DNA of 63,663 nt, counting the filler, from Octopus bimaculoides (taxonomy: Eukaryota), in assembly GCF_001194135.2 (NCBI RefSeq). It is 10 parts of 9 records of this genome, joined end to end, with 100 filler letters (N's around TTAATTAATTAA, not from the genome) between each part and the next. Parts side by side here need not be neighbours in the genome. Positions count along the whole stretch, not along the records: positions 32,175 to 37,365 come from NC_069007.1; 9 more parts are not named here. One strand, written 5' to 3'. How positions within the stretch are numbered: position 1 is the stretch's first letter; every line of letters starts with the position of its first letter. Position numbers and translations under genes: made by a program. Shown here one piece after another: positions 32,174 to 37,465 of this stretch. The notes under the pieces were generated by a model. It saw only the letters and a list, made by a program, of their open reading frames with translations, did not search any database and was not told where the DNA came from.

Positions 32174-32445
32174 NCCCTTAACGTAGTTCTCGGGGATATT
32201 CAGCGTGACACAGTGTGACAAGGCTGACCCTTTGAATTACAGGTACAACAGAAACAGGAAGAAAGAGTGAGAGAAAGTTGTGGTGAAAGAGTACAGCAGG
32301 GTTCGCCACCATCCCCTGCCGGAGCCTCGTGGAGCTTTAGGTGTATTCGCTCAATAAACACTCACAACGCCCGGTCTGGGAATCAAAACCGCGATCCTAT
32401 GACCGCGAGTCCACTGCCCTAACCACTGGGCCATTGCGCCTCCAC
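32174..32445 (-). mobile_element. tRNA-derived SINE, family D
   Basis: Minus-strand head GTGGAGGCGCAATGGCCCAGTGGTTAGGGCAGTGGACTCGCGG...GGTTTTGATTCCC with A/B-box-like motifs. The 3' end runs into a gap. Confidence 0.75.
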
Positions 32446-33071
32446 TTAGAACACTACAGCTTAAAGGTTTCACAATTTTATTTCTCTTCAAATCCCTCAG
32501 GAATAGATAATATATCATTTGGGGAGTTTTACCTTTGATAGACTAGTGTCCTATCCAGAAAAAGACTTACCTCTCATTCACTTCAAACTATAAAAGTTGA
32601 CAGTCTATATAAGTTTTCTGTGCTGTGGCCAAATGAGGAATCTGACATTTAAAGTTTGACCTTTGAGAAAGAGAAATTTTCTTTTCAACTGAACTTCAAC
32701 GTATAATTTCTGTCTACACACCACCACTGCCACCAGTTCTTTCAGATTCCATTCTTTTATGTATAAAATTGGGTGCCTCGCAGAGATCTCGTCTGCCACT
32801 TGGAAACATTATTTATTTCTTTAATTACATTATTTTGTTTGATTTTTTTATTTTTTTTATTTCTGTGATATTTCTTGTAACATTTCTATTTCAAAATATT
32901 TATTTAATCATTGAAGTCAGACTGGCATGGTAACCCTTACTCTCGACATGATGCCCCTATTCCATGTCCTGCATTCCAGAGTGCAACCCATCAGTGCTGA
33001 CACAGTCGTCGTCTTTCCTTACCTTGTTCACATATCTTATATCTGCATACCACACATTACATTTCCATTAA

Positions 33072-33292
33072 CCCTTTTGATACCAACCCGGCTGAAACTG
33101 TCTCTGGCTCTGTAGAACAAATATCTTGTTTTCATAAGTTCTGAATTAAAATCTTCCACCAAACCTTAGTCACAATTTATGTTCCTAACACTAGTTTAAT
33201 GATAACTAAGTTATTTTACTAAATTCTTTGTTATATTTAAAATAATTGAAAGAAACACAGAACATCTCAACAGAAATATGGTAGCAAAAGGG
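33072..33292. mobile_element. piggyBac-type MITE, 221 bp
   Basis: TTAA-CCCTTTT ... AAAAGGG-TTAA termini. Confidence 0.8.
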
Positions 33293-33312
33293 TTAACAAA
33301 TGATTAATTTAA

Positions 33313-33533
33313 CCCTTTTCATACCAACTTGTCTGAAACCACCTCTGGCTCTGTAGTACAAATGTCCTGTTTTTATAAGTTCTGAATCAAAATCTTCCAC
33401 CAAACCTTAGTCACAATTTATGTTCCTAACACTAGCTTAATGATAACTAAGTTATTTTACTAAATTCTTTGTTATATTTAAAATAATTGAAAGAGACACA
33501 GAGCATCTCAAAATAAATACAGTAACGAAAGGG
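33313..33533. mobile_element. piggyBac-type MITE, second copy, 221 bp
   Basis: TTAA-CCCTTTT ... GAAAGGG-TTAA. It is colinear with 33072-33292 but has scattered substitutions. Confidence 0.8.
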
Positions 33534-33904
33534 TTAATNNNNNNNNNNNNNNNNNNNNNNNNNNNNNNNNNNNNNNNNNNNNNNNNNNNNNNNNNNNNNN
33601 NNNNNNNNNNNNNNNNNNNNNNNNNNNNNNNNNNNNNNNNNNNNNNNNNNNNNNNNNNNNNNNNNNNNNNNNNNNNNNNNNNNNNNNNNNNNNNNNNNNN
33701 NNNNNNNNNNNNNNNNNNNNNTATAAGTTCTGAATCAAAATCTTCCACCAAACCTTAGTCACAATTTATGTTCCTAACACTAGCTTAATGATAACTAAGT
33801 TATTTTACTAAATTCTTTGTTATATTTAAAATAATTGAAAGAGACACAGAGCATCTCAAAATAAATACAGTAACGAAAGGGTTAATGGCCTCCCAGAAAA
33901 CAAA

Positions 33905-34180: not shown

Positions 34181-34479
34181 CCGCTATATGTAGTATCTAA
34201 GTTGCCAAGGATGTTATAACTGATTATTTAATTAAAAAGCATTTAAATTACTATTTAGCTGGACACTATATCCATATTCAGGAGCAAGGCATCTGGTGAG
34301 AACCAGAGGTCATTCTAGCAGAAATACATTTTAGATATAAATATTGTAAGTATACACTTTATATTAGAGAGAGAGAGAATCTATAGAAAAATGGTTAGAA
34401 TTAGGATGCCTTAACTTGTGAATGTTGGATGATGACTGAAAGAATACAATCATGAATGCAAACAGCTGAAATGGGGTTC

Positions 34480-34685
34480 CAGGAATGTGTAGCATGCCAA
34501 GCAAAATGCTTAGCAGCATTTCACCTATCTTAATGTTCCAAGTTCAAATTCTGTTGAGGTTGACTGTGCCTTTCATCCTTTCGGCTGTTGATAAACTAAG
34601 TACCAGTTGTGTACTGGTGTCAATGTAATCGTCTTGCATCTTCCATTGAAATAGCTGACCTTGTGCCGAAATTTGAAACCAATAT
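34480..34685 (+). mobile_element. SINE family B
   Basis: AAAATGCTTAGC...AGTTCAAATTCTG...GCCTTTCATCCTTTCGG...GACCTTGTGCCGAAATTTGAAACCAATAT. Confidence 0.75.
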
Positions 34686-35408
34686 AAGTGGTGAGGCGGG
34701 GTGGGGAGATGATGGGGAGGTCTACTTTTCGAGTTTCTTTAATTTACTCAAAGCCTTTCTTTACATATTTATAATTCTTCCCGCTTGCCCCTCTACCCCC
34801 TCCATCTCCTCTTCCACGTGCTTTTCTTCCCCACCACCTCCTCCTCCTTTTCCTCATTCTCCTCCTCCTCTTTCAGATTTACTCCAGTAAACACCCCCTC
34901 TCCACCGTTCCTTGGTAGATTTATATTCCTCCCCCCCCCCNNNNNNNNNNNNNNNNNCCCCCCCCCGCGGACATCGCTGCTGTCATCGTCATCGTCGTCG
35001 TCACTCTTAAATGCCAAACCTTCCAATTACTGCAAAACATTTCGGAAATAAACATGGAAACACGCACCGTTGCTACGGCGATGACTGTACCCAATATTGA
35101 ACCTTCACCTGTTTTGTTATTGAAATGTAAAATTAAATACCAATGACGATGACGGATGTTTAATGAGTGAGTCGTTATCTTCAGTTTATCATCTCTTTTA
35201 CGTTGTTTTGGTTCATTAGCATTAGCAGAAGTTTTCAGTTATCTCATGTTATTGGATGTTTACCAACTGGACGGTGATAGTGGTGGTGGTGGTGGCATTA
35301 GTGAGATGATGATAGCATTGGCAGTAATAGTGGTGGTGGCGGCTATGGTTATGATGGTTGTTTGTGCTAGTGTGACGGTGGTAGTGATGATTATGATTAA
35401 ACTCTTAT

Positions 35409-35635
35409 ACTTATTTCTTTATTGCCCACAAGGGGCTAAACATAGAGGGGACAAACAAGGACAGACAGAGGGATTATTTTTTTAACGCCCAGACAGGGCC
35501 CCGGGACGATGGGATCCCAGGGCCGCAATGTGCGTTCGAGGTGTCGATGTTCACTGAGTCCTGCAATTCGCATCAGTTCACGTGGATAGCCGCGCTCTTC
35601 ATCGACGGACGAGCAGAGTGATCCCCCGTCCAGGG
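35409..35635 (-). mobile_element. Chimeric retro-insertion: 5.8S rRNA + A7 + SINE/LINE-type 3' tail, with 12-bp TSD
   Basis: TTAAACTCTTAT occurs exactly at 35397-35408 and 35636-35647. The tail (plus strand CCCACAAGGGGCTAAACATAGAGGGGACA...AGGGATTA) also occurs at the 3' end of the SINE at 62109-62150. Confidence 0.85.
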
Positions 35636-35637
35636 TT
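35484..35637 (-). rRNA. 5.8S rRNA: Full-length 5.8S rRNA sequence; orphan retroposed copy, probably a pseudogene
   Basis: The minus strand reads AACCCTGGACGGGGGATCACTCTGCTCGTCCGTCGATGAAGAGCGCGGC...GAATTGCAGGACTCAGTGAACATCGACACCTCGAACGCACATTGCGGCC...CTGTCTGGGCGTT (154 nt). It has the conserved 5.8S motifs and the 3' GC-rich hairpin GGCCCTGGGA/TCCCGGGGCC. No ITS, 18S or 28S sequence flanks it. Confidence 0.95.
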
Positions 35638-36637
35638 AAACTCTTATTCTGTCACCTGCATTGCCTCAGTCCACCTAGTTCTAAAGTAGGCACCTGTAAC
35701 AAAGTACAACAACATTAACTTACAGTAATTAGCTCTCCATCTTATATAAACTACCCCTATTTTGCAGAAAAAAGTGTAGGTGGTTAGCTATATGTATANN
35801 NNNNNNNNNNNNNNNNNNNNNNNNNNNNNNNNNNNNNNNNNNNNNNNNNNNNNNNNNNNNNNNNNNNNNNNNNNNNNNNNNNNNNNNNNNNNNNNNNNNN
35901 NNNNNNNNNNNNNNNNNNNNNNNNNNNNNNNNNNNNNNNNNNNNNNNNNNNNNNNNNNNNNNNNNNNNNNNNNNNNNNNNNNNNNNNNNNNNNNNNNNNN
36001 NNNNNNNNNNNNNNNNNNNNNNNNNNNNNNNNNNNNNNNNNNNNNNNNNNNNNNNNNNNNNNNNNNNNNNNNNNNNNNNNNNNNNNNNNNNNNNNNNNNN
36101 NNNNNNNNNNNNNNNNNNNNNNNNNNNNNNNNNNNNNNNNNNNNNNNNNNNNNNNNNNNNNNNNNNNNNNNNNNNNNNNNNNNNNNNNNNNNNNNNNNNN
36201 NNNNNNNNNNNNNNNNNNNNNNNNNNNNNNNNNNNNNNNNNNNNNNNNNNNNNNNNNNNNNNNNNNNNNNNNNNNNNNNNNNNNNNNNNNNNNNNNNNNN
36301 NNNNNNNNNNNNNNNNNNNNNNNNNNNNNNNNNNNNNNNNNNNNNNNNNNNNNNNNNNNNNNNNNNNNNNNNNNNNNNNNNNNNNNNNNNNNNNNNNNNN
36401 NNNNNNNNNNNNNNNNNNNNNNNNNNNNNNNNNNNNNNNNNNNNNNNNNNNNNNNNNNNNNNNNNNNNNNNNNNNNNNNNNNNNNNNNNNNNNNNNNNNN
36501 NNNNNNNNNNNNNNNNNNNNNNNNNNNNNNNNNNNNNNNNNNNNNNNNNNNNNNNNNNNNNNNNNNNNNNNNNNNNNNNNNNNNNNNNNNNNNNNNNNNN
36601 NNNNNNNNNNNNNNNNNNNNNNNNNNNNNNNNNNNNN

Positions 36638-36757: not shown

Positions 36758-36879
36758 CAAATCCACTCACAAGGCTTTGGTCGGCCCGAGGCTATAGTAG
36801 AAGACACTTGCCCAAGGTGCCACGCAGTGGGACTGGACCCAGAACCATGTGGTTGGTAAGCAAGCTACTTACCACACAG
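36758..36879 (-). mobile_element. Family A SINE head fragment
   Basis: CAAATCCACTCACAAGGCTTTGGTCGGCCCGAGGCTATAGTAGAAGACACTTGCCCAAGG. Confidence 0.9.
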
Positions 36880-37465
36880 TGCTTTGAAAGTTGAACACAC
36901 TCTCACCTTCTTCTGAGAGCAAAATCATGTGAAATACTTGACATCACTGGTAAGTTCCAGTAACAAACCATGATGGTGAATATGTTAAATAAAATATGAA
37001 TACCAGCCACTACGCTTTACATTACACTTTCTATCTTTCTAATTACTTAAACATGGTTTATTAATATTTCAACATGACAGCCGCTCTTTTCAATGTTTAA
37101 AAGAATAACAAAAAAACAGTTTAATCATTTTATTACACTAATTAGGTTTATAAACGAGAAGAATGACTTTTTGACAGCACAGGTTTTAATCAATTTTATT
37201 TAATAACTCTTCCTGAAGAAATTTATTTCAAAAAATCAATTAAATACTTAGTTTTTTGACCAGTTTCGTAATTTAGATTCATTTTAATTAACCTGTTTTG
37301 TTTTTTTTTGCTCTTTTTTTTTGTGATAAGAGTTTATTGTGATTTCAAGATTCTTAACACTTTATNNNNNNNNNNNNNNNNNNNNNNNNNNNNNNNNNNN
37401 NNNNNNNNNTTAATTAATTAANNNNNNNNNNNNNNNNNNNNNNNNNNNNNNNNNNNNNNNNNNNN

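What the first reader, a model, noticed from the sequence alone, without database searches (positions are those of the whole stretch)
35397..35647. Chimeric retroposon: full-length 5.8S rRNA + oligo(A) + SINE 3' tail, with a perfect 12-bp TSD
Seen: on the minus strand a complete 154-nt 5.8S (35637-35484) is followed by A7 and then TAATCCCTCTGTCTGTCCTTGTTTGTCCCCTCTATGTTTAGCCCCTTGTGGGCAATAAAGAAATAAGT. That tail also terminates the family B SINE at 62109-62150. The unit is bracketed by TTAAACTCTTAT on both sides (35397-35408, 35636-35647), so rRNA and tail inserted as one event. No SINE head, ITS, 18S or 28S lies next to it. Established: chimeric retrogenes such as U6/L1 form by template switching or RNA ligation, and SINE heads from tRNA, 7SL, 5S, U snRNA and 28S are described. 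5.8S is a Pol I product with no internal Pol III promoter. Inference: a mature, possibly oligoadenylated 5.8S was joined to the LINE-recognised tail and retrotransposed. It is either a one-off chimera or a member of a 5.8S-headed SINE-like family; I am not aware of a named one but cannot search.
Basis: partly seen in the sequence, partly recalled or inferred. Interest (0 to 1): 0.85.

Follow-up and report, generated by a model that had tools for sequence, protein, structure and literature searches.

The report
One-off 5.8S rRNA–SINE-tail chimeric retrocopy
A mature 5.8S ribosomal RNA, carrying a short U/A tail, was joined to the last 68 bases of this genome's most abundant SINE and pasted into the chromosome in one retrotransposition event; it is a clean, single-locus, old pseudogene of a known type, not a new mobile family.

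Summary
On the minus strand lie a 12-bp repeat, a full-length 5.8S rRNA copy (Rfam 101 bits, model 1-154), TT, A7, 68 nt of SINE 3' end, then the same 12-bp repeat.

Reads from the same species show three things:
- The 68 nt are the 3' end of a hugely abundant SINE. Its body normally continues upstream, so A7 is not SINE sequence.
- The real rDNA departs from the copy exactly at the 5.8S ends, into ITS1 and ITS2.
- The 5.8S/A7/tail junction has single-copy depth in three individuals, even at 80% likeness.

A second species carries both outer junctions at the orthologous locus, so this is neither a misassembly nor a recent event. The copy differs from the expressed 5.8S at 6 of about 152 positions, and four of these are CpG-to-TpG changes.

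Best explanation: a bipartite chimeric retropseudogene of the U6/L1 or WEIRD-MgSINE type. It was made in one LINE-mediated event, by template switching from SINE RNA to a 3'-tailed mature 5.8S, or by RNA ligation before reverse transcription.

There is no 5.8S-headed SINE family at this junction. The partner LINE and the origin of TT+A7 remain untested. I rate it a new member of a known kind, of modest interest.

The parts
35636..35647 (-). 5' copy of the target-site duplication (minus strand ATAAGAGTTTAA). Its last two bases (AA, 35637-35636) are also the first two bases of the 5.8S, so the true duplication is 10-12 bp.
   Evidence: Exact 12-mer, the only such pair in the contig. rDNA reads diverge from the window at 35637/35638.
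35486..35637 (-). Full-length 5.8S rRNA retrocopy (about 152 nt). It differs from the expressed rRNA at 35495, 35519, 35583 and 35491 (CpG to TpG), at 35615 (C to A) and at 35488 (T to G). Position 35486 is a C/T polymorphism at a CpG.
   Evidence: Rfam RF00002, 101.3 bits, model 1-154. RNA contig X38 (553 nt, depth 1294) matches 35492-35637 with 4 differences, and its loose ends give ITS2 and ITS1. DNA reads show the same differences.
35484..35485 (-). Two T (U in RNA) that are not in the rDNA, which has AG here. They may be non-templated 3' additions to the 5.8S RNA, or additions made by the reverse transcriptase.
   Evidence: Comparison of the window with the rRNA contig's loose end: real ...GTCCGGTCG|AGAGGCGG, window ...GTCTGGGCG|TTAAAAAAA. 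The origin is inferred.
35477..35483 (-). A7 linker between the 5.8S and the SINE tail. It belongs to neither the SINE consensus nor the rDNA.
   Evidence: 4,609 (X21) and 4,262 (X22) reads at 95% likeness, and 14,451 (X21) at 80%, leave the window at 35476 and continue with the SINE body. The rDNA has AGAGG here.
35409..35476 (-). 5'-truncated copy (68 nt) of the 3' end of a very abundant SINE: TAATCCCTCTGTC...GGGCAATAAAGAAATAAGT. It has one difference from the majority sequence (35468). A small GCCC/GGGC hairpin is predicted ahead of the A-rich end.
   Evidence: Read depth of about 9,400 against 2-4 on the flanks (X21), and contig word depth of about 1e7 against 41.6 (X1). The same tail is abundant in species B, C and D. 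Fold.
35397..35408 (-). 3' copy of the target-site duplication (ATAAGAGTTTAA). Its first five bases, ATAAG, repeat the SINE's terminal ATAAG, which is microhomology expected for target-primed reverse transcription.
   Evidence: Contigs X1 (749 nt, depth 41.6) and X4 (470 nt) run from the left flank through this repeat into the tail.

Best explanation
This is a bipartite chimeric retropseudogene made in a single LINE-mediated retrotransposition event.

Proposed sequence of steps:
1. A LINE reverse transcriptase began target-primed reverse transcription at a nick in the target ...ATAAGAGTTTAA..., using the 3' end of an abundant SINE RNA as template. The SINE's terminal AUAAG matches the start of the duplicated target.
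2. After copying 68 nt it moved to the 3' end of a mature 5.8S rRNA that carried a short non-genomic tail (UU + A7), and copied it to its 5' end.
3. Second-strand synthesis produced the 10-12-bp target-site duplication.

The product has no promoter and never amplified. It has decayed as a neutral pseudogene, mostly by CpG transitions, and is inherited at the same locus by at least two species.

Shown here: the anatomy, the borders of each part, single-copy status, orthologous presence and the decay pattern.

Inferred: the template switch itself (as opposed to RNA ligation before reverse transcription), the tailing of the 5.8S before capture, and the identity of the LINE.
For: - Full-length 5.8S: Rfam model 1-154. 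Its ends coincide with where rDNA/rRNA reads depart into ITS1 (35637/8) and ITS2 (after 35486).
- The 3' part is a 5'-truncated SINE. Thousands of reads continue beyond 35476 with ...CACTGGGGTCGATGTAATCGACT, so the break and the A7 are specific to this locus.
- Both parts have the same orientation, and one exact 12-bp direct repeat flanks the composite, with a chance of about 4e-6. No separate repeat flanks the tail alone.
- The junction is single copy. X1 unitig 35449-35525 has depth 41.5 against 41.6 for the flank unitig; X3 contig 35449-35545 has depth 60.7. Nothing else spans the junction at 80% likeness.
- It is real and old. The left junction is in X1 and X4 contigs. The right junction is in 4 X21 reads carrying the locus-specific A at 35615. 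Both outer junctions are in species D contigs (472 nt: left flank into the tail; 220 nt: 35554-35773).
- Six differences from the expressed 5.8S, four of them CpG to TpG, fit neutral decay.
- The anatomy meets the published feature list of chimeric retrogenes, including a WEIRD-MgSINE case with 12-bp repeats (PMC2104539). LINEs with stringent 3'-end recognition (L2, RTE) are reported to make such chimeras by template switching (PMC4476161).
Against: - The two parts are not directly fused: 9 nt (TT + A7) lie between them. Classic chimeras lack this, and adenines at a junction have been read elsewhere as a sign of two separate insertions (PMC4476161).
- The partner LINE was not found, so recognition of this tail is assumed.
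- Oligoadenylated or uridylated 5.8S could not be demonstrated in cephalopod RNA reads.
- The right flank 35639-35737 is absent from the Logan contigs of four runs of the same species. It is supported only by a few raw reads and by the species D contig.
Confidence: 0.8

Rival explanations
1. The structure is the same, but the two RNAs were ligated before reverse transcription. A tailed 5.8S 3' end was joined to the 5' end of a cleaved SINE RNA fragment, and the LINE then copied one chimeric RNA from its recognised tail. This model has been proposed for U6/L1 chimeras (recalled from my own knowledge; not checked in a paper here).
For: The final DNA anatomy is identical to that predicted by template switching. 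A LINE with stringent 3'-end recognition would need only the intact 68-nt tail. The break falls right after the conserved SINE core ...GTAATCGACT, where an RNA cleavage site is conceivable.
Against: Nothing in the sequence distinguishes it from template switching. No junction-spanning RNA was looked for successfully. The published comparative evidence for non-L1 LINE clades is framed as template switching (PMC4476161).
Confidence: 0.25
2. Two independent insertions. First a polyadenylated 5.8S retropseudogene arrived with the 12-bp duplication. Later a 5'-truncated SINE copy landed exactly between its A-tail and the 3' repeat, without making a duplication of its own.
For: There is an A-run at the junction. 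A-tails are known landing sites, and junction adenines were interpreted this way for a U6atac/Alu case (PMC4476161). A few other loci have this tail preceded by an A-run: extra depth at 35480-35484, and X19 contig 35413-35484.
Against: The tail fragment has no flanking duplication of its own (A7 on the left, ATAAGAG on the right). The start of the outer duplication (ATAAG) matches the SINE's 3' terminus, as expected if the SINE RNA primed at this target. Species D already carries both outer junctions, and no intermediate state was seen.
Confidence: 0.08
3. It is a member of a 5.8S-headed SINE-like family that has amplified.
For: It has head + linker + LINE-type tail architecture. Many other 5.8S-like sequences sit at single-copy depth in species A-D. 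In species B and C a single-copy contig joins tail position 35438 to 5.8S position 35490.
Against: The junction is at single-copy depth in X1, X3 and X4 even at 80% likeness. The other dispersed 5.8S-like copies that could be read continue into ITS1- or ITS2-like sequence, so they are DNA-level rDNA fragments. By established knowledge 5.8S has no internal Pol III promoter. Reviews of rDNA-derived transposable elements and of octopus repeats list none.
Confidence: 0.03
4. It is an assembly artefact that joins rDNA reads, SINE reads and unique sequence.
For: The scaffold is a short-read draft with gaps 150 bp and 440 bp away. The right flank 35639-35737 has zero depth in the Logan contigs of four runs of the same species.
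Against: Locus-specific variants and junctions recur in independent data. The X1 and X3 junction contigs are at single-copy depth. X1 and X4 left-junction contigs are present. X21 raw reads cross the right junction. Species D contigs cover both outer junctions. A perfect 12-bp bracket is not what an assembler error produces. The zero depth fits graph clean-up of a roughly 100-nt low-depth path between two very high-copy repeats (inference).
Confidence: 0.02

Closest known systems
Bipartite chimeric retrogenes/retropseudogenes formed during LINE reverse transcription (U6/L1, U3/L1, 5S/L1 and 7SL/L1 in mammals; MINE = WEIRD-MGL and WEIRD-MgSINE in Magnaporthe)
   Same: The 5' part is a full-length small cellular RNA. 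The 3' part is a 5'-truncated retroelement end. Both have the same orientation, and one short direct repeat (12 bp here; 10-20 bp in the literature) brackets the whole (PMC2104539). WEIRD-MgSINE is the nearest formal match: a full-length RNA plus a 5'-truncated SINE with 12-bp repeats.
   Different: The captured RNA is 5.8S rRNA, a Pol I product that I did not find named as a chimera partner in the papers read. The host is a cephalopod mollusc. The 3' part comes from a SINE without a poly(A) tail. A 9-nt non-genomic linker (UU + A7) sits at the joint instead of a direct fusion.
U6 chimeras made by non-L1 LINE clades with stringent 3'-end recognition (L2, RTE) through template switching (Doucet et al. 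2015, PMC4476161)
   Same: A retroelement 3' end that lacks a poly(A) tail is used as the initial template, followed by a switch to a small nuclear or nucleolar RNA. This shows the mechanism is not confined to L1.
   Different: Those cases start on LINE RNA and capture U6. Here the start is on SINE RNA, or on a LINE sharing its tail, and the captured RNA is 5.8S. The clade of the LINE is unknown.
rRNA-derived SINE heads (5S-derived SINE3/OS-SINE and others; 28S-derived SINE28)
   Same: rRNA sequence is fused to a retroposon tail (review PMC10946416).
   Different: Those are amplified families, and the 5S ones carry an internal Pol III promoter. This element is a single locus, and 5.8S has no such promoter. 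No 5.8S-derived transposable element is listed in that review.
Dispersed rDNA fragments ('orphons') and rRNA pseudogenes
   Same: A 5.8S sequence outside the rDNA array. Several such copies exist at single-copy depth in these genomes.
   Different: The other copies that could be read keep ITS1- or ITS2-like flanks, so they are DNA-level copies. This one ends at the mature RNA termini, carries a non-genomic tail and a target-site duplication, and is therefore RNA-mediated.

Membership tests
Bipartite chimeric retrogene (feature list of Gogvadze/Buzdin, PMC2104539) | 5' part is a full-length copy of a cellular RNA | tested here: met
   Rfam model 1-154 of 154. rRNA and rDNA reads leave the window at 35637/8 and after 35486, that is at the mature ends +/-2 nt.
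Bipartite chimeric retrogene (feature list of Gogvadze/Buzdin, PMC2104539) | 3' part is a 5'-truncated copy of a retroelement | tested here: met
   68 nt match the 3' end of a SINE whose body continues upstream in thousands of reads (loose ends at 35476).
Bipartite chimeric retrogene (feature list of Gogvadze/Buzdin, PMC2104539) | Both parts in the same transcriptional orientation and directly joined | tested here: inconclusive
   Same orientation: met. Direct joining: not strictly met, because TT + A7 (9 nt) lie between the parts. They are best read as a 3' tail on the captured RNA.
Bipartite chimeric retrogene (feature list of Gogvadze/Buzdin, PMC2104539) | [quoted passage not shown] | tested here: met
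   Exact 12-mer at 35397-35408 and 35636-35647, unique in the contig, chance about 4e-6.
Bipartite chimeric retrogene (feature list of Gogvadze/Buzdin, PMC2104539) | Made by a LINE's enzymatic machinery (partner LINE sharing the 3' end) | not testable with these tools
   No eukaryotic genome or repeat library could be searched. A metagenome scan for the tail found nothing. Active RTE, Dong-R4, CR1 and L1-Tx1 LINEs are reported in Octopus (PMC13282606).
SINE family with a 5.8S head | Many copies sharing the head-tail junction, each with its own target-site duplication | tested here: not met
   Junction contigs are at single-copy depth (41.5 against 41.6; 60.7). No other junction-spanning contig appears at 80% likeness in X1, X3 or X4.
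SINE family with a 5.8S head | Internal Pol III promoter (A/B boxes or 5S-type control region) in the head | not tested
   By established knowledge 5.8S is processed from the Pol I precursor and has no such promoter. ARAGORN finds no tRNA-like structure in the piece.
DNA-level dispersed rDNA fragment | 5.8S contiguous with ITS1 and ITS2 sequence | tested here: not met
   ITS1 (...GCAAATACCGA|AACCC) and ITS2 (CG|AGAGGCGGTCACG...), as seen in rRNA/rDNA reads, are absent from the window copy.
Simple processed pseudogene of a polyadenylated small RNA (template choice) | A-tail directly followed by the 3' target-site duplication | tested here: not met
   A7 is followed by 68 nt of SINE tail before the duplication.

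The most novel reading that the evidence does not exclude
5.8S/SINE-tail chimeras may be recurrent in octopods, in the way U6/L1 chimeras are in mammals. The cause would be that the SINE/LINE ribonucleoprotein meets surveillance-tagged (U/A-tailed) 5.8S in the nucleolus.

On this reading the single-copy contig in species B and C, which joins tail position 35438 to 5.8S position 35490, would be a second, independent event with a different truncation point. The UU + A7 linker would then be a genomic fossil of rRNA 3' tailing.

My junction test would only have caught copies with the same break point.
Probability: 0.15. Interest if true: 0.5.

Novelty: new member of a known kind. Interest (0 to 1): 0.3.

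Why it matters
It is a tidy, well-bounded example that the template-switch (or RNA-ligation) route to chimeric retrocopies also operates in a cephalopod. The SINE tail involved has no poly(A), and the captured RNA is a Pol I-derived rRNA. I did not find 5.8S named as a chimera partner in the reviews and papers read here.

It shows in miniature the step thought to create new SINEs: a LINE-type tail grafted onto a small RNA. It also shows why most such grafts die, since without a promoter this one stayed a single copy.

The UU + A7 linker may record 3' tailing of 5.8S.

Practically, it is a clean presence/absence marker shared by at least two species. It also warns annotators that this 5.8S hit is a pseudogene, not an rDNA locus.

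Tried and rejected
- Family hypothesis. I laid contigs and reads at 95% and 80% likeness across the junction. Only the single-copy locus spans it. Rejected for this break point.
- Misassembly. The zero depth of the right flank in four contig runs looked alarming. However, raw reads and the species D contig 35554-35773 cover it. Rejected.
- Divergent 3' end of the 5.8S. At first the last 8 nt seemed unrelated to the rDNA. Re-reading the loose end in register showed homology through CG, with one CpG transition and one transversion. Only TT + A7 is foreign.
- Empty site in species B and C. The left-flank contigs stop in the GGT-rich repeat at about 35279-35295 and the right flank is not recovered. 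No verdict.
- Oligoadenylated 5.8S in poly(A)+ RNA reads of species E. No loose-end consensus was returned at the 3' end. Inconclusive.
- Fetching better assemblies through ORFs that cross the junctions found no record.
- A metagenome scan for the tail gave 0 hits. A junction-only run search sampled 4 words and listed 0 runs. A literature search for the SINE sequence strings gave 0 papers.
- Idea that the target was an old SINE tail. The 18 nt upstream of the 5' repeat match the tail end at 10 of 18 positions (nominal p = 0.01). Local alignment of the flanks against the tail is no better than shuffles. Treated as chance.
Full report
**1. What is in the sequence**

Read on the minus strand, window 35647-35397 is ATAAGAGTTTAA | 5.8S | TT | AAAAAAA | TAATCCCTCTGTCTGTCCTTGTTTGTCCCCTCTATGTTTAGCCCCTTGTGGGCAATAAAGAAATAAGT | ATAAGAGTTTAA.

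- Rfam's 5.8S model matches 35483-35637 at 101.3 bits (gathering score 42), E = 2e-25, over all 154 model positions. It is the only RNA-family hit in the piece.
- The 12-mer TTAAACTCTTAT (plus strand) is exact at 35397-35408 and 35636-35647.
- It is the only exact 12-mer pair at such spacing in contig 34958-35798. The chance expectation is about 4e-6 even with slack at both ends (family D2).
- The 5' copy overlaps the first AA of the 5.8S, so the duplication is 10-12 bp.

**2. Identity of the three parts, from reads of the same species (organism A; names are coded)**

*Tail.*
- Positions 35410-35476 have a read depth of about 9,400 against 2-4 on the flanks in raw run X21. Contig word depth is about 1e7 against 41.6 in X1.
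- Beyond 35476, 4,609 X21 reads at 95% likeness, and 14,451 at 80%, leave the window. They continue, in the element's sense, with ...AGTTACGCACTGGGGTCGATGTAATCGACT|TAATCCC.
- So the 68 nt are the 3' end of a very abundant SINE. The copy here is 5'-truncated, and the A7 is not SINE sequence.
- The same tail is equally abundant in organisms B, C and D.
- A related SINE body, with a different tail, sits at about 34470-34690 in the piece.

*5.8S.*
- The 5.8S part has a depth of about 400-500 in X21, which reflects the rDNA.
- Nearly all those reads differ from the window at 35495, 35519, 35583 and 35615.
- An RNA contig of organism A (X38, 553 nt, depth 1294) covers 35492-35637 with exactly these four differences. 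Its loose ends give the species' ITS1 (...GCAAATACCGA|AACCCTGG...) and ITS2.
- Put in register, the real sequence is ...GGGGCCCCGTCCGGTCG|AGAGGCGGTCACG... and the window is ...GGGGCCCTGTCTGGGCG|TTAAAAAAA.
- Homology therefore runs to CG (35486), with two further differences (35491 and 35488). TT + A7 replaces ITS2.
- In all there are 6 differences in about 152 nt. Four are CpG to TpG. Position 35486 is itself a C/T CpG polymorphism: the window has C; X1, X3 and X21 have T.
- This is the signature of a neutrally decaying, once-methylated pseudogene derived from the mature RNA. It is not an rDNA fragment.

**3. One locus or a family?**

- In X1 the 77-nt unitig 35449-35525, which spans tail/A7/5.8S, has depth 41.5. 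The unique left-flank unitig has 41.6.
- In X3 the contig 35449-35545 has depth 60.7, which is that run's single-copy level.
- At 80% likeness nothing else spans the junction in X1, X3 or X4.
- Many other 5.8S-like sequences exist at single-copy depth in organisms A-D. Those whose ends could be read continue into ITS1- or ITS2-like sequence, so they are DNA-level rDNA fragments.
- There is therefore no amplified family with this junction.

**4. Is it real, and how old?**

- Left junction: contigs of 749 nt (X1) and 470 nt (X4) run from 35000 through the repeat into the tail.
- Right junction: the 100 nt right of the 5.8S (35639-35737) are absent from the Logan contigs of four runs of organism A.
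  - I attribute this to graph clean-up of a short low-depth path between two very high-copy repeats (inference).
  - Four X21 raw reads carry the locus-specific A at 35615 and run to about 35675.
- In organism D a 472-nt contig covers the left flank (11 differences in 290 nt), the repeat and the start of the tail. A 220-nt contig covers 35554-35773, that is 5.8S, repeat and right flank, with 17 differences.
- The insertion therefore predates the A-D split and is not an artefact.
- In organisms B and C the left flank (about 90% identical) cannot be followed through the GGT-rich repeat.
- B and C do have a single-copy contig that joins tail position 35438 to 5.8S position 35490. This is either the ortholog with a 51-bp deletion or an independent chimera. 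I could not resolve which.

**5. Mechanism**

The anatomy matches the published definition of bipartite chimeric retrogenes: a full-length cellular RNA at the 5' end, a 5'-truncated retroelement at the 3' end, the same orientation, and short direct repeats around the whole. That definition includes a WEIRD-MgSINE chimera with 12-bp repeats (PMC2104539). LINE clades with stringent 3'-end recognition (L2, RTE) are reported to make U6 chimeras only by template switching (PMC4476161).

The duplicated target begins with ATAAG, the same five bases that end the SINE. This microhomology is expected if the SINE RNA 3' end annealed to the nicked target.

I therefore propose:
1. Target-primed reverse transcription started on SINE RNA.
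2. After 68 nt it switched to the 3' end of a mature 5.8S carrying UU + A7.
3. It ran to the 5.8S 5' end, and the cDNA was integrated with a 10-12-bp duplication.

RNA ligation before reverse transcription gives the same DNA and cannot be excluded.

A two-event history would be a 5.8S-A(n) pseudogene followed by a SINE fragment landing exactly at the end of the A-tail. It would require an insertion without its own duplication, and it leaves the ATAAG microhomology unexplained. I rate it at about 0.08.

That the A-run and the two U were added to the RNA by tailing enzymes is an inference from general knowledge of nuclear RNA surveillance. Poly(A)+ RNA reads of organism E gave no usable 3'-end consensus.

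**6. Comparison with what is known**

- A 2024 review of rDNA-transposon relations lists 5S- and 28S-derived elements but none from 5.8S (PMC10946416).
- A 2026 repeat annotation of Octopus vulgaris lists tRNA-, 5S- and U-type SINEs, and active RTE, Dong-R4, CR1 and L1-Tx1 LINEs, again with no 5.8S element (PMC13282606).
- The kind of event is well known. The specific combination is new to me: 5.8S, a SINE tail without poly(A), a cephalopod host and a U/A linker.
- It fails the SINE-family test on copy number. It meets four of the five structural criteria of chimeric retrogenes. The fifth, direct fusion, is blurred by the 9-nt linker.

**7. Verdict**

This is a new member of a known kind and is of modest interest.

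Open points: the partner LINE, the origin of UU + A7, the state of the locus in organisms B and C, and whether other 5.8S-tail chimeras with different break points exist.

Noticed in passing
window 33068-33296, 33309-33537, 33657-33885 (the last runs across an assembly gap): There are three adjacent copies of a roughly 229-bp element with terminal inverted repeats TTAACCCTTTTGATACC...GGTAGCAAAAGGGTTAA, each bounded by TTAA. It looks like a piggyBac-type MITE that is tandemly arranged or repeatedly inserted.
   Followed up: partly
window 35746-35798 (runs into the gap at 35799): This is a high-copy repeat (contig depth about 1e5) that departs from its family consensus at 35746. Family members continue to the right with GTGGACTCGAAC..., which looks like a tRNA T-arm in reverse. 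So another SINE-like element lies about 100 bp from the chimera.
   Followed up: partly
window 35639-35737: The unique right flank of the chimera has zero depth in the Logan contigs of four runs of the same species. It is present in raw reads and in a contig of a related species. This is probably loss of a short low-depth path between two high-copy repeats during contig building.
   Followed up: partly
organisms A-D, contigs laid on window 35492-35637: Numerous full-length but diverged (80-93%) 5.8S-like copies sit at single-copy depth. Several continue into ITS1- or ITS2-like sequence, so they are dispersed rDNA fragments. One reads ...GGTCGATAAAAAAGCGG at its 3' side.
   Followed up: partly
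organisms B and C (X13, X16), joint between window 35438 and 35490: A single-copy contig places the last 30 nt of the SINE tail next to the 5.8S 3' end, skipping 51 nt that include A7. It is either the ortholog with a deletion or an independent 5.8S-tail chimera.
   Followed up: partly
window 35410-35476, read joints: Reads and contigs often show the SINE tail followed by a short spacer (for example AAACGTTAGCATG...) and then another tail ('goes back' joints). A few loci have the tail preceded by an A-run. Tail-to-tail arrangements therefore seem common for this SINE.
   Followed up: no
window 35648-35665 compared with 35409-35426: The 18 nt upstream of the 5' repeat (GGCAATGCAGGTGACAGA) match the SINE's last 18 nt (GGCAATAAAGAAATAAGT) at 10 of 18 positions. 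The nominal p is 0.01, but this was noticed post hoc and local alignments are not better than shuffles.
   Followed up: yes
window 32175-32445 (minus strand), about 34470-34690 (plus strand), about 36770-36880: There are three further SINE copies of other families. The first has a tRNA-like 5' part and is cut by the edge of the piece. ARAGORN calls none of them a tRNA.
   Followed up: no
window 35270-35390 and 34790-34990: These are GGT/GAT-rich and CCT-rich low-complexity tracts with moderately repeated words. The first blocks tracing of the orthologous locus in more distant species.
   Followed up: no
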